Shown in pieces: positions 11,095 through 64,000 of a stretch of DNA of 64,000 bases (positions within the stretch are counted from its first letter, which is position 1; the number at the start of each line of letters is the position of its first letter). This DNA comes from Podarcis erhardii. Taxonomy: Eukaryota. Location: assembly GCA_964252035.1 (NCBI GenBank), contig OZ176209.1. One strand, given 5' to 3'. The notes below the pieces were generated by a model. The model had not been told where the DNA came from. It was given only the letters and a program-made list of their open reading frames with translations, and made no database searches. The translations under genes were made by a program, and so were the position numbers.

Positions 11095-11710
11095 CCGTAT
11101 TTTTCACCCCATAGGACGCACCGGCCCATAGGACGCACCGGCCCATAGGATGCACCAAGTTTTTTGGGGGGGAAATAAAGAAAAAAAATTATTTTCCCCC
11201 CAGGCGCTTGTGGGGCCGGCAGCGGGGAGAAGCGCTCTTCTCCCCGCCGCCTGCTTGCAGACCAGGTCTGGGGACAGCGGGAAGACGCGCTGCGCCTCCC
11301 AGCTGTCCCCGGAGCTTGCGGGGCAGGCAGGGGGGAGAAGCGCTCTTCTCCCCGCCACCCGCCTGCAGACCAGGTCTGCGGACAGCGGGAAGACGCACTG
11401 CGCCTCCCCGCTGTCCCCGGAGCTTGCGGGGCTGGCTGCGGGGAGAAGAGCGCTTCTCCCCGCCGTCAGCCTCCAAACCACATCGGGAGACAGCGGGATG
11501 GCGGCGTTCTGCCTCCCTGCTGTCCCCCGACCTTGTGGGGCTGGCGCTGCGGCTCTCCTGAAGCCTGGAGAGCAAGAGGGGTCGGTGCACACTGACCCCT
11601 CTCGCTCTCCAGGCTTCAGCGAAAGCCTGCATTCGCCCCATAGGACGCACACACATTTCCCCTTCATTTTTGGAGGGGGGAAAGTGCGTCCTATAGGGCG
11701 AAAAATACAG
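11095..11710. mobile_element. Tc1/pogo(Tigger)-type non-autonomous DNA transposon with ~3 internal 108-bp GC-rich repeats
   Basis: 27-bp TIRs (CCGTATTTTTCACCCCATAGGACGCAC vs revcomp CTGTATTTTTCGCCCTATAGGACGCAC) with TA on both sides. Confidence 0.85.

Positions 11711-28730: not shown

Positions 28731-28778
<48 letters not shown>
28731..28778 (+). repeat. (AAT)16 microsatellite
   Basis: Direct reading. Confidence 0.95.
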
Positions 28779-28780
<2 letters not shown>

Positions 28781-29831
28781 CACCATATGGAGGAATTCAG
28801 CTTCATGCTGTAATGATTGTTCTATCAGTGCATGCATTTCTGCTTGTCAGGTTGAACTGTCCCTTCTCCTTACCCCCCTGCAATGTTCTAGGGATTCTCT
28901 TGACTCGCCAGAGTAGATTTGGTGGAGCAGGTGAAGCCCCATTGTGCTAGTGGGAGACAATTTGCTGGCTTCCACTAGCATGTTAGGTTAGGTGATTCTA
29001 GGGTGTAGTATCCACACATGTCAGGAGAACTGTTGGATTACTATTCAACAGCTAATAGTGAAAAAGTCAATAAATGTAGAAAACATCAATTTAGGCAGCT
29101 GCCAGATTCAGCTGTGTTTTCCATATATATACTCACGTGTTCTGCTTATTTTGTGTGTATATATATATATGCCCATTTGACAGCTTCAGTCTGGAGCACT
29201 GACACTGTTACAGGTGATTCATAATACTCATTCTGCACTTGTAAAAATTTGACATTTAGGAACTATCAATAATTGTATTTTATATTTTTGTAATTTGCTT
29301 AGAGGTTTTCTTAGATCAAGTGATATATAATTCTTTGTTAAACAATTAATGGCTCGGGTGCTGCTTTGATATAAAATCTTTAATCTGCCAAACCATTGAG
29401 ACATTCTTTCAAATCTTCAATTTCTTCATGACCTATGATCAGAATCAGGCTCAATATTCAGATTGTAAAATTGAAGGTGTGCCTTTGGATCATAAGCATT
29501 CAAGGATAAATTAACTTTTGAGGTGCTCAGTCAATATAATTCAATATCTGGAGGAATATATATATGAAATGCTTGATTTAAAATGAAGGGAAAATGGAAC
29601 GTATTGAATGATAGCAAAATTTTATTAATTGTCAGTACAACCAATATTGAATTGGGGTTTGGAAAGAGATGGATAGTATTAAGAGGGTATATGTAGATCA
29701 GAATTTGTTAATACTTTACAGTTTGTTGATATTCCATTCCTTGAACCAAACAGTAGTTAACCATAGTGTATACCATGAAATGAACAGAAGAAAATGAAAA
29801 TATTCCTTAATTGTCATTCTTTAATTTCTAG

Positions 29832-44733: not shown

Positions 44734-45195
44734 GTATGTTGAGAGAAGTTCTGTTGGCAGGCTCTTTGGATGTGGATTTGTTTGTGTGTGTGGTAGACCT
44801 GGATGAATGATAAAAAGGGAGCAAAATTATTAATTCAAGCCAGTTACTGGCACTACTGATTATCTAGTGAGGACCATCTTTCAGGCAAGCGTACTTAGTA
44901 CTTATCCTTAAGTTCTCTGTGCACTGCCTTCCATTTTACTCACATTCTCATTGGTTGGCAAGTAGTTCTACAGGAGTGCCACTGAGTGGGAGGAGGAGGA
45001 GGATGGGCCAAAGCTCCATCCATTCTCCGATGTGAACTGCCTGCAAGTCACACCACTCCCTCCACATCCTTTTCTCCTTTGTGTTCCAAACTGAGGGAGC
45101 AGGAGCTGATGGAGACTAGATCTGCCCCTGGGACTTTCAATTGTTGATACCAAACATAGTTTATTCAGATACTGACAATTCTTTTTTATCAACAG

Positions 45196-45368
45196 GCACA
45201 AATGACCAGCTCTTCCTGTCCTGTGACTTCTCCAGTAGTGGCGCCAGGTTCTCAAGGGAGTCATATTCATTGCCCTCCTATTCCACAGTCTACTTTACAT
45301 CGAAACTCTCCTTCTCCAGTACCAAGTCGTACTCCCACACCTCACCATACACCCCCAGGACTGGTATC

Positions 45369-45412
<44 letters not shown>

Positions 45413-45681
45413 CAGCACCACCACAGGCAACAATTGCGTCTGCTCCTGCCACTGTTCCTCAAGCGATGCCACCCGGACCACCGTCACAAACTATGCACCC
45501 CCCACAGAGGCAGACCCCAACACCTCCCCAGGCTCAGCTGACTCCGCAAGTGCAGCCTCCAGTTTCTGTTACCCCTTCTGCAGAGCAGCAGCTGCCACAG
45601 CAACCTCTTTCGCAACAGAGCACGACTGCATCTGTGCCCACCCCTACAGCAGCACTGCAGCCTCAGCATCCTACAACACCC
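45196..45681 (+). CDS. EP300: EP300 exon 14 (486 nt; P/Q-rich, contains Q14)
   Basis: atcaacag|GCACAAATG ... ACACCC|gtaagg; encodes AQMTSSSCPV...SPSPVPSRTPTPHHTPP. Confidence 0.94.
45370..45411 (+). repeat. Coding (CAG)13CAA repeat (Q14)
   Basis: In frame within exon 14. Confidence 0.95.
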
Positions 45682-46159
45682 GTAAGGAAGTTTAAGTTTT
45701 CTAGGGCTATTAAGAGTGAAAGTCCAACCTTGGGCAAAATCTTTTTAGGTTGTTATTTACAGTATCAAAGGCTAAATGGTTTCTGCTGTCTCAATAACGT
45801 GCATTGCATGAAGGTATAGAACAGTATTCTGGACTTTGGAATGCATGCTGTCTTTTGTATAGCAGAGTTTCAAAGAATTAATTCAGCTACAGATGTCTGA
45901 TAAAAATATGTGTGTGTGATTTCTGGGGAGGAAGGTGCAGAAAGTGGTATAGCTAGACATAATTTCGTGGTAGGCTAGTATTAAGATATTGGGGTTTTTT
46001 TGTGTAGCGCCTCTTCTTATTGAGATGCACGTGGCATAAGTTGCTTGAGATACCATCTAGCTTAGAAGCACAAAATAAAGCAAAGAGTACAATTGCTGCA
46101 AAACTGTGTAGCACTACTTGACATGTAGCTTTACTAGTTTTGTTGCTTTCATTCTGTAG

Positions 46160-47319: not shown

Positions 47320-47372
<53 letters not shown>
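47085..47372 (+). mobile_element. L2-like LINE 3' end with an (ATT)17 tail
   Basis: TTGTTAGC-like 'GTTAGCCGCCCTGA...GGGCGGGGTATAAA' terminus followed by (ATT)n at 47320-47370; 5' boundary approximate. Confidence 0.65.
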
Positions 47373-47374
<2 letters not shown>

Positions 47375-48218
47375 GTGGGGAAGTGTGTGTGTCTGTCTGT
47401 TTCTCTCTCTCTGCGGCCCCTTCGGCGCTTCTCTCCCGGGCATCGGAGAACAAGAGAAAAGCAGAGAGGAGACAGACAGACAGACAGACAGACAGACACA
47501 GACAGAGGACTCAGCATGGGACTCGGGAAAACCAGGAGCTGGCTGACCGACCCATTCACCAGGGAAGCTGGAGTCGCTCTGTTGGGTTGGGCTTTGGGTG
47601 GGCAGGAAGGAGAACTGAGGCTCATTGGCTTCGCAGTGTGCAGGCAGCAAGGTCTCCTGTTGTGAGGTGTCTTCAAGGAGCAGCTTGCCTCCACCCCTTC
47701 ACTTCTTCCAGCCCCGCTTCATGACATTCACTCCTTCTGCGCCTCGCCTGCCTTCTCACTGGCTCTCCCTCTTCCCCACCCGGTCCGCGCTCTCCAGCAC
47801 AGGCGAAAGAGCAACCTCCTTCTGAGTTCAAAAAAAGGAGGGAAAGGCAACGAAATCAGGCTTATGCAAAAGCCAGGCAGAAGCATCCCGATGTGGCACA
47901 TTGCAAAGCTGCCCCCTCTCCCGTGTGTGTGTTTTGCTTCGCGCAAGCGTGGCCCAGCGTAGCTCTCCTCTCCCTGGTGTCGGAGGGCAGGCTCGTCCAC
48001 CCCCACCCTGCTCTGCATCATGGATCTTGAAAACAGCAGCACAGCCCGAGCCAGCTGTTTGTCCTCAAGGGTAAGAGACAGACCCTTCTGTTTATCGATG
48101 GCTAGCTGATCTGTTGCTCTCCGCCAAAATAAAAAATAAAAATCCAAACCTGCTTTGGATCCAAACCCACACCATCACAACCCACTCTGGTACACGTGTC
48201 ATAGGTTCACCACCACTG
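47373..48218. mobile_element. GC-rich unclassified repeat ending in a hAT/Charlie-like terminus
   Basis: Abrupt GC/CpG rise, (GACA)n near 47480-47506, right end ...CATAGGTTCACCACCACTG; no matching left TIR or TSD found. Confidence 0.4.
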
Positions 48219-49313: not shown

Positions 49314-49553
49314 GATTACTTTGATATAGTAAAGAACCCCATGGATCTTTCTACAATCAAGAGGAAGCTTGACACAGGACAGTACCAGGAGCCCTGGCAG
49401 TATGTCGATGATATTTGGCTCATGTTCAACAATGCCTGGCTTTACAACCGCAAAACATCTAGAGTATATAAGTACTGTTCCAAGCTGGCAGAGGTGTTTG
49501 AGCAGGAAATTGATCCAGTTATGCAGAGCCTTGGCTATTGTTGTGGACGAAAG
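49314..49553 (+). CDS. EP300: EP300 exon 18 (240 nt; bromodomain)
   Basis: tttttcag|GATTAC ... CGAAAG|gtaagg; encodes DYFDIVKNPMDLSTIKRKL...WLYNRKTSRVYKYC...GYCCGRK. Confidence 0.97.
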
Positions 49554-50335: not shown

Positions 50336-50424
50336 TTGGAGTTTTCACCACAGACTTTATGTTGCTATGGCAAACAGTTATGCACAATCCCACGAGATGC
50401 TACATATTACAGTTACCAAAACAG
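50336..50424 (+). CDS. EP300: EP300 exon 19 (89 nt; RING start)
   Basis: cttttcag|TTGGAG ... AAACAG|gtaaga; encodes LEFSPQTLCCYGKQLCTIPRDATYYSYQN. Confidence 0.96.
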
Positions 50425-50865
50425 GTAAGAAAATGCTTGGGTACAGCATTGCACCTGCTGTGAAAAATTATATTAGATATAGGCAGGCATGCACTTACAT
50501 TTGTAGCATTCTCAGCAGATTACTTCCCATGCAAGCCTTGTTGCATCAATTGACTTTTACTTCCTGTTTCAGAAATTAGGATGTTAATATAAACTCTCCA
50601 TATGCTTTAGATTAGTTCAAAGCTTTTGCAGTAAAACCATCATTTTTTCCTCTGTATGAAACAGTGCACAGAAAAGCATGCATGTTTGCATCTTGAGTTC
50701 ACTGCATTTAACATTCAGTCTTGTCCTAAGGGAGACATATTTCCTGTTTTAGATCAGTTATTTCAACCAAAGCTGTAGTTGTAAAGCTGTGTTTTGTTTG
50801 AGCCGCGTGAAAAGCAGGGTGCCTGCAAGGTCAGAGAGGGGCTGACTTCACTCTGCCTCTTACAG

Positions 50866-51283: not shown

Positions 51284-52530
51284 AAAAACTGTGTTTGGAG
51301 CTCTTTTAAGGGAGGAAGCAAAACTGAGAACACAACTTTTTCACGTTTTTTGTCAGGAGTATTGCTGCAAATCATGCTTTGGGTGGGTTGCTGAAGTAGA
51401 TAACTAGTTCTTTAACAAATCTAAAGCTAAGCTTTCATTTATTTCTATAACTTTACAGCTTCATGCCATAAGTCATTTTTATCACAAATGCCCACTTGAG
51501 TAAAGAAATCATCATATGTATACATATGAGCTGGGATCCAAAGAACTGCTGTAGGTGTGTACATGGGCTAGGGCATTGCTACTGGATTTTTTTTACCTTT
51601 AATCAGCAGACTGTCATGCCATATCACAGCTTTTGAAATTAAGAGGAGTTTCAAAATCAATGTGGAATGGAAGGTTGCTGTCCAAAACATGCAAGGCAAA
51701 GCCCCCCCCCCCAGCAGATAACACTAAGTGGTTCTTTGGACACTGGTCTTTTGAATGTCCAAAATCAATGTTTGTCATTGTATCAGTGTAATAAATAAAC
51801 TAACCTGTTATAGATAGGAAACATAGGTGGTGAAGAAGTGATCCGTTCCTTAGCAATTACATTTCCTCTAGTGTTGGTTTTGCTTTGCTTTATAATACTG
51901 TCACAGTTTTGTTTTTTTGTTTTTGTTTCTTTTTGTTGTATGTTTGCACTCAAATTAACTTGCTTAGCAATGGAAAGGCTGCAGTTTCTGTGCACTCTTG
52001 AGGGTAAAAAAACATCTTGAGTAAAGCATTCAACATTAATTTAGATGAAGATGGAATCCTTTTAATATGTCAATTATACATCAATTTGGAGGCATGGAAC
52101 ATCAGTACGTCACATATTAAGAACATACATATGCATATCTCATTGTCAGATGCCTTAAAGCACCTGTCATTTTGGCAGATCATGAACAATTACATAGAAA
52201 TTGTTTTGGGGATGGTTACTGCTGCTTTAAACAGATGTTGCAAACAAAAAATGCTTTGAGGGGAAGGACTGGCCTGTCAACATTTGAGCATTCTCAAGAT
52301 GGATTGTTTTCACCCCTTTCCAGCCCTCTCCTGGCAGATGTTCTTGTGAAAAGAGTTGCTACCCTGATGCAGATGTCAGAGCAGCAATTGCTCTTACCCT
52401 TTCTTCATTTTGATTCTCTGCTTTATTGTAGCATTGATTATTGAAATGAGGAGGGCATGGGCATACTAAAATGGAATACTCTTTTTATTTGCTATAATTT
52501 GCTGCTTGTGATCCCATTTGAGAGATTTAA

Positions 52531-52873
52531 TGCTAATCTGTGCTTTGCCTTGGCTTTCTGCTTTGTGTTGTCCTGTCTTGCTTCTGTGTTTTTGTTTTTC
52601 GTCCTGCAAATCCCTATTTCTTTGTTCGTGTGTGTGTGTTGTTTTTTTATTTCTCCTTCATGCTTGTCGTTGTCTGCACTTGGCTTTGATTGCAAAAAAA
52701 CCAACCCAAACAAAAAAACAAAACCAAACACAAACTCTGGGTCCCATAAATCTTCATCATTGAATGTCCCTGTCGCCGTTGATGACCTGCTCTCTGCTCC
52801 CGCCCCCCTCCTTGGCCTGCTGTGATTGGTGGCTCCGTTGCTTGGCTTGGGCTGTGTTGTGTGGACGGAACAG
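52531..52873 (+). promoter_or_regulatory. Candidate distant branch point (tgctaAtc, A at 52536), long U/UG-rich tract and AG-exclusion zone before exon 20
   Basis: Read base by base, there is no AG from 52525 to 52871. The YUNAY motif CTAAT at 52533-52537 sits at the 5' edge and is followed by a pyrimidine/UG tract. Confidence 0.65.
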
Positions 52874-52903
52874 TTCACCCAAATATGGCCTTCTTGCCGA
52901 CAG
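52874..52903 (+). CDS. EP300: Candidate 30-nt 5' extension of exon 20 from an upstream alternative acceptor (adds SSPKYGLLAD)
   Basis: CAG at 52871-52873 is the first AG after a 347-nt AG-free stretch and is in frame with the CAG at 52901-52903; no stop codon between them. Confidence 0.7.
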
Positions 52904-52984
52904 GTATCATTTCTGTGAGAAGTGCTTCAATGAAATCCAAGGAGAGAGCGTTTCTTTGGGGGACGACCCATCACAGCCTCAAAC
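52904..52984 (+). CDS. EP300: EP300 exon 20 (81 nt; RING)
   Basis: gccgacag|GTATCAT ... CAAAC|gtgagt; encodes (R)YHFCEKCFNEIQGESVSLGDDPSQPQ(T). Confidence 0.95.
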
Positions 52985-55014
52985 GTGAGTAGCTATCTCC
53001 TTTCTAATTATTTTTAAATTTCTTAACAACATTTATCATAGCATTAGTCAATCTCATACTGTAAATACTATTAAACAATTTACATCAAATTTATGGTAAA
53101 ATTCCTTATTTAATGCTGAGGCCTTGTGCAATTATGGGAGGAACAGAGGACAGGAATATTATTTGAAAACTAGACAAACCTTATGTTTCAGAATAAGCTT
53201 TAGCTTTTAAAACACATATTTTGGTGAGAATATGAAAAACCACTTTTGAAAAGTAGAAGCATTCTTCCAGTTTATATGCTAGATTTAATAACGACCTAAT
53301 GTTTAAGAATTCCAATCCCACCTGAGCCTGCAAAATTTTTTGTTGCTTCTGCTTGTAGAAAAGAGACTTCACAGCTTGCTTTAACTTTTAACTATTTTGT
53401 GCATGTGCATGCACACACATACACACAATGACTACCTTTAATCTGTTGAGCAGGAGATCCAGTAAGGAATTGTTCAGGCAGGTACCTAACTGAAAGCAGG
53501 CCTAAATTTGAAAACACGGGTGACAGATTTTCCTGCTCAAAATAGGGTTATGTTGGAGCAGAGTGTTCATAGGAATTGTTTGCTGGAGGTTGCAACCATG
53601 TTCTGACACTTAGAATATTTATGTGCCTTTACATATTGGCCATATTTGAACGCCACATCCTCTTCTCCTTAGGCACAGCTACAAGGATGAGATGAGAACT
53701 GCATGTTGTCCAAACCCTAAACTGTGACTAACCTTAACTATGGCTTGCAACAACTCAACTTCAAACCATGTGTTATGAAGCATGCTTGTTTCAAACAACC
53801 CATAGTTAATGCTAGCCACAGTTTAAGTTAAGTTCAGATGACACGATGTTGCGGTTAATCTAACCCAGAAGAGGAACCATTGGAACTCTCAGGAGGGGAG
53901 TGCACAAGCTCAAGGCTTGTGGCTCACTCTTGTCATGCTGATGTGTGACTTGTCGTGAAATCTGGACTGGGTCAATGTGTAAGGCTCCCTTGCTTCAACT
54001 TCAATATTTGTAATGTTGTTCTGATAGTTCCATAATATGTGAAATAGATTACTTAATTGCAGTAAGTGGGGGTCCTTTGCCTGATGGATTCTGGTTATAT
54101 GTGAAAATATATAAACAGGGAAGGTTTTAGAAGCAGGAAAGAGCCTAATGCCGAGGATTAAACAAGAAGCGCTTGGAAGGAGACTTAGCTAAAAACTTAG
54201 TCTTCAGTCTTGTCCACCACTAATTTAACCTATAGGAGAAAATATGTAGTAGATTTTTGGAGAAGAAGTGCCTAAAATGCTTTTAAATACATTTTTAATG
54301 CTAAAATACACTGGATCTCAAGAGACATAATTTTTAGTCTGGTTGGATTCTGAGGCAGCAAATGTCTTCCAGAAAAGGAAAGTTTCCTACCCTTCAAAAG
54401 GTGAAAGGGAGCTAGCCAGGAAAAGCTTCTCTAGGCAACAATTTCATAACTGGAACATCACCACCAAGAACATCCTAGATGTCCAGATTTTTCCTCTAGT
54501 CCAAGAACACTCTTTGAAATCTGAGAAACAGTTGTAGGCACTACAAAATATCCTTTCATATCCAGGCCAAGTTCAAGGTGTTACTATTGATATACTAATA
54601 CAAAACCCTCAACAACTTGGGATCCATTTACTTGTGAGATCACCTTACCTCATTATATGCACATTTGATCTTTGAACATTTTAAAATACCTATTTTAACT
54701 TTTTTTTGTTGACATTACATTAACTTATGTCTTGTAAACCACTTAGAGGTTTATTACAATTAAGCAGTACGGTATATAAACTTCGTTAAATACTAGATAC
54801 ACACACACCAAAGCAGGCAGAATACCTCTCCCCCACAAAAAAATTAATACAAACAATTACCACTCCCCTGTCCTTCCCCAAACTTGACATTTATTCATTT
54901 TGTATACTGCCCTTCACCCACAGATCTCAGGACAGTTAGTTCACAACATTAAATTACAATATAAAAACCACAAAATACATAGTAAAAAAGAACAACATCA
55001 ACAACTTATAATGA

Positions 55015-62501: not shown

Positions 62502-62553
<52 letters not shown>
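62502..62553 (+). repeat. (TAA)17 microsatellite
   Basis: Direct reading. Confidence 0.95.
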
Positions 62554-62554
<1 letters not shown>

Positions 62555-64000
62555 TTTTCCCCTTAAATTCAGTATTTTCTACAGAATTAAATGAATAAGC
62601 TCATCTGCTCATATTGGTCTTCTACTTGGGGATGGATTGTTAAACTATTGCAATAACTGTTGGGAGATGTATCCTGAGACCATTGTGCTAGCCACATAAT
62701 GTGCCCATATCTCTTGAATGGGGGAAAGTAGCCTATGAGTGACCTATTTGTAGAGGTCAAGTAATGCCTAAAGTTTTAATACAAGCTAAGTACTCGGTAT
62801 TTGAGAGATGTTAATACTTCTTAGAAGTGGCACCATGTAAACCAGTACCACATTTTTTTCTCCTGATATTATTTCTATTTATTATGCTGTATTGTTAATG
62901 AGACTATATATGTTTGTTACTGTAATAGACTTGCCTTACAAAACACTTGAGAACATCCAACGTCTGAGGCTTGCATGCCAGAGAGAGATCTAGCCCAACA
63001 AGTTTGCAGGACTGGTTTAAATATCAACTGTGACTTGATACTATAAAGACTCTCCTCCTGCAAGAGAGGGGAGTGGTTGTGGTCGGGAGCCGGGCTCCGC
63101 CTCAAGCTGGGGGCATTAGCCCCCTGCCTCCCACTCACCTGGCTGGCGCCCACACCCACGGGCAGGCACCCAGCCAGATGCCTGCGAGGGGGCGTGTTTA
63201 GCAGCCTAAATTGCTGCGGCGCCAGCCTTCCGGCCTCACTTTTCGTCGTCCCGTCGCGAGTCTATAAGTACAAACCTTCAAGGAGCTTTTGACTTGTATG
63301 TGCACTTTTTGCCCTCCATTGCACAGGACAGTTCCCTTTCTGGTCTGAGGCAAGTCAGAGTTAGTCATTTTGTCTGAACTGTCAAACTATGGTTAGTACT
63401 TCACCTGTGGGCCAGTATTGGAAACAAAAGTTTGATCCCGTTTTCTGGCCAAAGACAAATCCTAGTTTTCCAGTTCACATAAAATCACAGCATGCAAGCC
63501 TAAAGCTTCTTGAAGGTTCATTCTAGTAGCACCAAACCAAGGTTTGACATTGTGACTGAACCTTTCTGACATTAATTTCTTCCAGAGATGAGTGCTGTAA
63601 AATAAAATATAAAACAAGGGCCCCCAACTTTTGGAGTTTTAAGGCCACCTTTGGAGATCTAAAACTCTCATGGGCATCCCAAGATATAAGTTTCAGAGAG
63701 GAAGAAAATAGTGATGCTCAGAATACCCCCCCAACAGACAAAACACCTATACATCTCTGATAACAAATATCAGATTAAAAAAGCAGTTAACATACCCTCT
63801 AAAATAGGCAACCTTCCCCAGAACAAATACAAGACAAGCAAGCCCCCCAAAACCTCATTTAAAGAAACATTAGAACTGAAGGGCAAGAGGTATTGGTGGC
63901 CACTAAGGGGGTGTCAATGAGGACACCATGGTGCCCACAGTTGTCATGTTGGTGACCCAAAGTATAGAATGTTACATGGCAAATAGAGAAAAAGTTTGGG

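What the first reader, a model, noticed from the sequence alone, without database searches (positions are those of the whole stretch)
52871..52903. Tandem in-frame acceptors 30 nt apart add SSPKYGLLAD to the p300 RING domain
Seen: exon 19 ends AAC AG|. Splicing to the CAG at 52873 gives N-SSPKYGLLAD-R-YHFC; splicing to the CAG at 52903 gives the canonical N-R-YHFC. No other AG or stop lies between them. Known (human numbering from memory): the junction is N1196/R1197, just before zinc ligands C1201/C1204, in the RING that restrains HAT activity. Inference: scanning from the distant branch point would favour the longer isoform, which adds an S-P phospho-acceptor and a lysine. This could be a splice switch that tunes acetyltransferase auto-inhibition. 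I recall similar inserts in predicted non-mammalian p300/CBP proteins but cannot verify this, and I know of no functional study.
Basis: partly seen in the sequence, partly recalled or inferred. Interest (0 to 1): 0.75.

Follow-up and report, generated by a model that had tools for sequence, protein, structure and literature searches.

The report
Ancient optional 10-residue p300/CBP RING insert
Two in-frame splice acceptors 30 bases apart in this reptile's p300 gene are real and conserved from insects to mammals in both p300 and CBP, giving an apparently unstudied protein form with ten extra residues in the RING domain that restrains the enzyme.

Summary
A CAG at 52871-52873 and the canonical CAG at 52901-52903 are in frame, with no AG or stop between them. 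The upstream site would add SSPKYGLLAD between N and RYHFC of the p300 RING.

It is not a chance AG. Both AGs, 30 nt apart, are present in all nine other loci I could read: teleost CBP-like and p300 genes, a further CBP-like gene, and three invertebrates. In vertebrates the 30 nt differ at 1-2 bases while the adjacent 81-nt exon differs at 16-20.

Forty-six database cluster representatives carry YQN-SSP[KQT][YF]GL[LIV]A[DN]-RYHFC. They include lizard, snake, frog, turtle, shark, bat, horse, bear and anteater models, for p300 and for CBP. Insect and crustacean CBP models carry a homologous segment. No solved p300/CBP structure contains it, and I found no paper on it.

Most likely the 30 nt do two jobs: they code in the long form, and they supply branch point, pyrimidine tract and acceptor for the short form.

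Not shown: use of the upstream site in this animal. The isoform ratio and any effect on acetyltransferase auto-inhibition are also untested. Earlier scan notes cover this same window only.

The parts
50336..50424 (+). Upstream RING exon (LEFSPQ...YYSYQN plus AG of a split codon); donor GT at 50425-50426
   Evidence: local tblastn to squamate p300
52525..52871 (+). 347-nt stretch without any AG, ending at the upstream acceptor; pyrimidine-rich run at 52787-52822
   Evidence: the longest AG-free stretch in the window (next longest 157 nt); 0 of 200,000 mononucleotide shuffles lack AG. Orthologous and paralogous loci have 152-251 nt zones.
52817..52845 (+). Conserved intronic element CTGCTGTGATTGGTGGCTCCGTTGCTTGG, containing a near-consensus branch point (gUgAu, A52825, 48 nt before the upstream AG)
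   Evidence: 27/29 identical to L005, a CBP-like locus where the motif is a perfect cUgAu. The 'DW' (GATTGG) motif recurs in intron-derived ORFs P0004-P0010, P0016, P0017 and P0237. The branch-point role is inferred.
52850..52864 (+). UG-rich motif (GGCTGTGTTGTGTGG) just upstream of the upstream acceptor
   Evidence: CTGTGT-like motif present in all six vertebrate loci aligned. A regulatory role is inferred only.
52871..52873 (+). Upstream (alternative) acceptor CAG
   Evidence: YAG is conserved at the same place in L001-L009.
52874..52903 (+). 30-nt dual-use segment. It codes (S)SPKYGLLAD(R) in the long form. In the short form it holds a candidate branch point UUCAC (A52877), the pyrimidine tract CCTTCTTGCC and the canonical acceptor CAG (52901-52903).
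   Evidence: 1-2 of 30 nt differ from teleost and CBP-like loci, against 16-20 of 81 in the exon.
52904..52984 (+). Constitutive part of the RING exon (RYHFCEKCFNEIQGESVSLGDDPSQPQT, with zinc ligands equivalent to C1201/C1204); donor gtgagt at 52985

Best explanation
This is the EP300 orthologue of a squamate reptile. Its RING exon has two in-frame 3' splice sites 30 nt apart, an arrangement inherited from the bilaterian CBP/p300 ancestor. The downstream site gives the textbook protein. The upstream site gives a form with ten more residues (SSPKYGLLAD) in a loop between two beta strands of the RING, immediately before the zinc-binding CxxC. The 30 nt serve two purposes. They are codons in the long form. 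In the short form they are the branch point (UUCAC), pyrimidine tract and acceptor. That double constraint would explain why even synonymous positions are frozen across about 450 million years and across the p300/CBP duplication. Shown here: the anatomy, the conservation, and the presence of both forms in gene models of many species. Inferred: isoform choice is a choice between a distant branch point upstream of the long AG-free zone (first AG = long form) and the branch point inside the 30 nt (short form). Also inferred: the upstream site is used in this animal, and the short form predominates. Speculative: the insert changes how the RING restrains the acetyltransferase or binds a partner.
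For: The sequence anatomy is. Both AGs are conserved 30 nt apart in nine other loci, including three invertebrates. In comparisons of the window with the four other vertebrate loci, third-codon-position differences are 0-1 of 10 in the insert against 12-14 of 27 in the adjacent exon (Fisher one-sided p 0.006-0.054). A search with an insert-bearing fish p300 gave 46 cluster representatives at 71 bits or more, all carrying the insert spliced after YQN, while everything else scored 48 bits or less. These include Pseudonaja textilis p300 with a peptide identical to the window's. Podarcis raffonei p300 isoform X1 also has the identical peptide. CBP isoforms of skates, a shark, a bat and a turtle carry it too. 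Arthropod CBP models carry a homologous segment. The UUCAC/CUCAC branch-point consensus lies 26 nt before the canonical AG in all vertebrate loci, and long AG-free zones lie upstream in all of them. Gooding et al. 2006 (PMC1431707) link such zones to distant branch points, first-AG selection and alternative splicing. The AlphaFold model puts the insert between strands 44-49 and 61-65 at pLDDT below 50, and the model matches 4BHW RING-PHD.
Against: Predicted isoforms from annotation pipelines are indirect evidence, and I could not inspect their RNA support. Only 3 of 59 sampled sauropsid/mammal cluster members have the insert, so it may be a rare form. The upstream acceptor has a poor local pyrimidine tract (0.45). 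Some teleost copies have lost the element (P0020, P0026). Freezing of synonymous sites could have another cause. The per-pair Fisher tests are on small counts and the pairs are not independent.
Confidence: 0.75

Rival explanations
1. The 30 nt are only intronic splice signals for the canonical acceptor. The upstream AG is a bystander or an assembly or decoy site that is not ligated, and the long isoforms in databases are gene-prediction artefacts.
For: A consensus branch point and a pyrimidine tract lie inside the 30 nt. The upstream AG has a weak local pyrimidine tract. Most gene models lack the insert. Some models are clearly wrong; for example P0237 reads intron sequence into the protein.
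Against: Ordinary branch-point and pyrimidine-tract regions are not conserved at 28-29 of 30 nt across paralogues. The frame is open and the upstream AG is kept in every locus read. Amino-acid changes are conservative (L/I/V, K/Q, Y/F, D/N). Independent pipelines (NCBI X-isoforms and UniProt entries I take to be Ensembl-derived) produce the long form in many lineages. In arthropod genomic ORFs with K instead of R after the segment, an in-frame internal AG cannot exist at that junction, so the segment must be constitutive there (inferred from the lysine codons, no DNA of a K-type locus was read).
Confidence: 0.1
2. One reading: the upstream acceptor is the preferred one in this animal, because a distant branch point is used and the first AG downstream is chosen, so the long form is the main p300 here.
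For: The 347-nt AG-free zone ends exactly at the upstream AG. There is a pyrimidine tract at 52787-52822 and conserved candidate branch points at 52782 and 52825. The first-AG rule for distant branch points is stated in PMC1431707.
Against: A conserved branch-point consensus lies 26 nt before the canonical AG. Most annotated squamate, turtle, bird and crocodilian models are the short form. All cDNA-derived constructs in the PDB are short.
Confidence: 0.12
3. The nucleotide-level freeze reflects a DNA element (intragenic enhancer or promoter) rather than RNA or protein constraints. The insert contains CCAAATATGG, which fits CC(A/T)6GG (a CArG-like box), and the intron 50 nt upstream has CTGATTGG (an inverted CCAAT box).
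For: The motifs are seen. The CArG-like string needs particular synonymous codons (CCC-AAA-TAT) and is identical in the window, L001 and L003-L005.
Against: The teleost p300 locus L008 has CCAAAATTTGG, with seven A/T, and the invertebrate loci lack the motif, yet both keep the two AGs and the peptide. Mammalian SSPQ forms would also break it. No binding data exist. The motif identities are from my own knowledge, not tested.
Confidence: 0.03

Closest known systems
Tandem alternative 3' splice sites producing in-frame insertions or deletions (the broader class that includes NAGNAG acceptors)
   Same: Two AG acceptors in one frame with no stop between them. Both products are full-length proteins that differ by a short peptide. 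The flanks and synonymous sites show raised conservation.
   Different: The spacing is 30 nt, not 3. At that distance each acceptor probably needs its own branch point, and the second branch point lies inside the optional coding segment.
Distant-branch-point exons marked by long AG exclusion zones (Gooding et al. 2006, PMC1431707)
   Same: An AG-free zone of 347 nt (152-251 nt in the other loci), with a pyrimidine tract towards its 5' side, lies upstream of an alternatively spliced exon border.
   Different: No branch point has been mapped here. The classic cases are cassette or mutually exclusive exons rather than a tandem acceptor pair.
p300/CBP RING domain as solved in the catalytic core (PDB 4BHW, 5LKU, 6GYR, 5U7G)
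   Same: The exon encodes the RING strand and CxxC zinc ligands (C1201/C1204 equivalents). It is identical in sequence to human p300 over RYHFC...PQT.
   Different: None of the 18 distinct solved sequences contains the ten-residue segment. The long RING has never been visualised or assayed, as far as the searches show.

Membership tests
Tandem in-frame alternative 3' splice sites | Two AG acceptors in the same reading frame with no stop codon between them | tested here: met
Tandem in-frame alternative 3' splice sites | Both acceptors are used in transcripts of the organism | not testable with these tools
Tandem in-frame alternative 3' splice sites | Both products are recorded in related species | tested here: met
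   long and short forms in gene models of squamates, turtles, frogs, fishes, sharks and mammals
Tandem in-frame alternative 3' splice sites | Both AGs are conserved across species | tested here: met
   AG at -30 and at 0 in all nine other loci
Distant-branch-point (AG exclusion zone) exons | AG-free zone much longer than about 40 nt upstream of the acceptor | tested here: met
   347 nt; 0 of 200,000 shuffles
Distant-branch-point (AG exclusion zone) exons | Experimentally mapped branch point at the 5' side of the zone | not testable with these tools
   Only consensus matches are available (52782; 52825 near-consensus)
NAGNAG acceptors | Acceptors 3 nt apart | tested here: not met
   The spacing is 30 nt
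CBP/p300 RING domain | Sequence match to solved p300/CBP RING, including the CxxC zinc ligands | tested here: met
Structured regulatory RNA | Stable or covarying secondary structure, or an Rfam match | tested here: not met
   z-score 0.38; no compensatory pairs; no credible Rfam match

The most novel reading that the evidence does not exclude
The ten-residue loop is the ancestral state of the CBP/p300 RING. The choice between a long and a short RING has been kept as a regulated splice switch since before the protostome-deuterostome split, and in both vertebrate paralogues. The reason would be that it sets how tightly the RING blocks the acetyltransferase site, or that it creates a docking motif (K-x-[YF]-G-L-x-x-D, plus an S-P site in vertebrates). 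On this reading all structural and biochemical work on the p300/CBP core has examined only one of two conserved states.
Probability: 0.25. Interest if true: 0.8.

Novelty: new member of a known kind. Interest (0 to 1): 0.6.

Why it matters
p300 and CBP are central transcriptional co-activators, disease genes and drug targets, and the RING is one of their two known auto-inhibitory devices. A RING variant conserved from insects to mammals, in both paralogues, with its synonymous sites frozen, is unlikely to be noise. Yet it is absent from every solved structure, and a 2025 review of p300/CBP regulation does not contain the word-stem 'splic' at all. If the insert changes auto-inhibition, E3-type activity or partner binding, it adds a layer of regulation. 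It would also be a class of variant sites, the upstream AG and the 30 nt, that clinical interpretation currently treats as deep-intronic. The locus is also a clean example of sequence that is codon and splice signal at once.

Tried and rejected
The local tblastn used a copy with those bases masked. The protein regions I searched and folded start after the homologous bromodomain part.
2. RNA structure masking one acceptor. Rejected: the folding z-score is 0.38 and the alignment shows no covariation.
3. Rfam: nothing credible.
4. AlphaFold of RING-PHD-HAT with the insert. The model was poor (mean pLDDT 43.7) and tells nothing about contacts with the HAT domain.
5. CArG/CCAAT DNA-element idea. 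Not conserved in L008 or the invertebrate loci.
6. Literature. Eight searches found no paper on this isoform. Delvecchio 2013 and Ortega 2018 are not held.
7. The DNA of P0006, the closest relative's ORF, was withheld by the tool and I did not pursue it.
8. I did not fetch contigs for the ORFs P0005 and P0007-P0011. Their species is unknown and they could be mammalian or human. No contig that I took for human was handled.

Full report
WHAT IS IN THE WINDOW

The + strand carries an EP300 orthologue from the N-terminal region to the first HAT exons. Local tblastn of database p300 proteins against the window, with bases 49377-49429 masked, gives the highest identity to squamates: Pseudonaja 88%, Phrynosoma and Tiliqua 87.5%. 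Turtles follow at 82-83%, birds at 81-82% and mammals at about 80%.

The exon before the finding is 50336-50424. It encodes LEFSPQ...YYSYQN, ends AAC AG, and is followed by gtaag. After a 2.4-kb intron there is a CAG at 52871-52873 and a second CAG at 52901-52903. No AG and no in-frame stop lies between them. The exon ends at 52984, followed by gtgagt.

Splicing to 52904 gives N-RYHFCEKCFNEIQGESVSLGDDPSQPQT, identical to human p300 over this exon. Splicing to 52874 adds SSPKYGLLAD. HMMER puts the gap exactly between N and R in all solved p300/CBP chains. The structural alignment to 4BHW, where model residue 146 equals residue 1282, gives N1196|R1197 and C1201/C1204. The observation and the numbering both stand.

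IS IT MORE THAN A CHANCE AG?

A word search with the 74-residue genomic open frame across the site returned three genomic ORFs from other organisms. An exhaustive representative search with the 39-residue extended exon returned 78 hits.

In the vertebrate genomic ORFs the sequence before the segment is unrelated intron translation, but SSPKYGL[LIV]AD sits directly before RYHFC. I read the DNA of nine loci:
- L001-L004: teleost, CBP-like by their FNEIQGNSVTL and MISKEQFEKKKND exons.
- L005: CBP-like, FTEIQGENITL.
- L008: teleost p300 type.
- L006, L007 and L009: invertebrates.

All nine have an AG at -30 and an AG at 0 relative to the R codon, in frame.

Against the four teleost CBP-like loci and L005 the window differs at 1-2 of the 30 nt, but at 16-20 of the 81 nt of the adjacent constitutive exon. 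At third codon positions the differences are 0-1 of 10 against 12-14 of 27 (Fisher one-sided p 0.006-0.054). These are small counts, and the fish loci are not independent of one another.

The few changes are a synonymous T/C in the split Ser codon, a synonymous ATT/ATC, and C/A/G at the first base of an L/I/V codon. Over 71 ten-residue versions the pattern is S-S-P-[K/Q]-[Y/F]-G-L-[L/I/V]-A-[D/N].

The element therefore predates the p300/CBP duplication. It is under protein-level constraint and under additional nucleotide-level constraint.

IS THE LONG FORM MADE?

Indirect evidence is strong. A search with a full-length fish p300 that carries the insert, scoring only 40 residues round it, gave a bimodal result. 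Forty-six cluster representatives scored 71 bits or more, all with the segment spliced directly after YQN. Everything else scored 48 bits or less.

The 46 include:
- many teleost p300 isoforms, from NCBI models and from UniProt entries I take to be Ensembl-derived;
- Pseudonaja textilis p300, with a peptide identical to the window's;
- the frogs Nanorana and Dendrobates;
- mammalian p300 of Tamandua and Ursus (SSPQYGLLAD);
- CBP of skates and a shark, the bat Pipistrellus kuhlii and the turtle Lepidochelys kempii.

A sample of cluster members added Podarcis raffonei p300 isoform X1 (a lizard, identical peptide), a horse p300 entry and another turtle CBP isoform. However, 56 of the 59 sampled members lack the insert. 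The long form is therefore widely modelled but is the minority of models.

Arthropod CBP models carry a homologous segment after YQN: Diabrotica CREBBP X2 (SSLKAYGLASD), Anabrus, Nesidiocoris and the ostracod Darwinula. A spider model lacks it.

In one invertebrate group the residue after the segment is K rather than R (RNPTPSLFSD-KY...). An in-frame internal AG cannot exist at that junction, so the segment must be constitutive there. I infer this from the lysine codons; I read no DNA of a K-type locus. L009, from the same group but with R, keeps both AGs.

Some teleost copies have lost the element altogether (P0020, P0026).

HOW IT PROBABLY WORKS

The upstream AG ends a 347-nt stretch with no AG. 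This is the longest such stretch in the 64-kb window, the next being 157 nt, and none of 200,000 shuffles reproduces it. The other loci have 152-251 nt zones.

Such zones mark distant branch points. From these the first AG downstream is taken in the second step of splicing, and they are enriched at alternatively spliced exons (Gooding et al. 2006, PMC1431707). Candidates here are UUGAU (A52782), followed by a pyrimidine run at 52787-52822, and gUgAu (A52825).

The second candidate lies in a 29-nt intronic element that is 27/29 identical in the CBP-like locus L005, where it reads cUgAu. Its GATTGG core recurs in the intron-derived ORFs of many vertebrates.

Inside the 30 nt, four bases after the upstream AG, lies UUCAC (CUCAC in L003). 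Its A is 26 nt before the canonical AG in every vertebrate locus, and CCTTnTTGCC follows it.

My reading is that there are two nested 3' splice-site units. Use of a distant branch point yields the long form. Use of the internal branch point yields the short form, and makes the upstream AG unusable because it then lies upstream of the branch.

The 30 nt are therefore codons in one isoform and branch point, pyrimidine tract and acceptor in the other. That would account for the freeze at synonymous sites. Both acceptors have weaker pyrimidine tracts (0.45 and 0.60) than most acceptors of this gene (0.7-0.9), as expected for regulated sites. A UG-rich motif just before the upstream AG is present in all six vertebrate loci aligned and could bind a regulator.

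All of this mechanism is inference; nothing here maps a branch point.

An RNA-structure explanation was tested and rejected. A DNA-element explanation (CArG-like CCAAATATGG, inverted CCAAT) does not hold across loci.

THE PROTEIN

An AlphaFold model of the snake RING-PHD with the insert (82-sequence alignment, mean pLDDT 68) places the ten residues between strand 44-49 (ATYYSY) and strand 61-65 (RYHFC) at pLDDT below 50. This is a loop at the tip of a hairpin, immediately before the CxxC zinc knuckle. The model matches 4BHW residues 1168-1282 (Z 8.8, rmsd 7.0 A over 115 residues).

A larger model that included the HAT domain was too poor to use. None of the 18 distinct solved p300/CBP sequences contains the segment.

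The RING sits over the HAT substrate site, and its deletion or displacement activates the enzyme (review PMC12547938). Whether ten extra residues at this hairpin change that is unknown.

The part shared with arthropods is a basic residue, an aromatic residue, G-L and a terminal acidic residue.

COMPARISON WITH WHAT IS KNOWN, AND NOVELTY

In kind this is a tandem in-frame alternative acceptor combined with a distant-branch-point architecture. Both are known phenomena. It is not a NAGNAG site.

The long isoform already exists in public databases as predicted proteins, so its existence is not new. What I could not find is any study of it:
- the peptide strings occur in no held paper;
- eight searches gave nothing relevant;
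- a 2025 review of p300/CBP regulation never uses the stem 'splic'.

The library lacks most subscription journals, so this absence is weak evidence.

- the event is shared by p300 and CBP and by arthropods;
- both AGs are conserved at the same spacing;
- the segment is more conserved at the nucleotide level than the neighbouring exon.

LIMITS AND COMPLIANCE

- No reads were laid.
- The DNA of P0006 was withheld and I did not seek it elsewhere.
- ORFs of unknown species that could be mammalian (P0005, P0007-P0011) were not traced to contigs, and no contig taken for human was handled.
- The species of loci L001-L009 are not known to me. Their assignment to fish, CBP-like or invertebrate rests on their exon sequences.

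Noticed in passing
window 52817-52845; L005 about 623-660: A 29-nt intronic element (CTGCTGTGATTGGTGGCTCCGTTGCTTGG) is 27/29 identical between this p300 intron and the intron of a CBP-like gene in another organism. That is unusual conservation for intron sequence across paralogues. It holds a branch-point-like cUgAu and reads as an inverted CCAAT box on DNA.
   Followed up: partly
window 52879-52888: The optional coding segment contains CCAAATATGG, which fits the CC(A/T)6GG CArG-box pattern (from my own knowledge). It is identical in five vertebrate loci but not in L008 or the invertebrate loci, so it is probably a by-product of the frozen codons.
   Followed up: partly
window 11199-11545: A GC-rich tandem repeat: 108-nt unit, 3.2 copies, 84% matches. 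It lies inside a GC-rich stretch (10-14 kb, GC 0.46-0.49) in an upstream intron of the gene. It is open in several frames, and its nature is not examined.
   Followed up: no
window 28732-28790, 47320-47380, about 62520-62570: Long trinucleotide microsatellites that read as poly-I, poly-N or poly-Y runs in the six-frame listing.
   Followed up: no
window 45160-45816: A large exon with a run of 13 glutamine codons (QQQ...) in the region between the KIX domain and the bromodomain. The length of such runs varies between species.
   Followed up: no
P0020, P0026, P0235, P0236 (teleost CBP-like copies): Some duplicated teleost copies have lost the conserved 30-nt element, or have unrelated sequence modelled there. 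This suggests the long and short RING forms may have been partitioned or lost after the teleost genome duplication.
   Followed up: no
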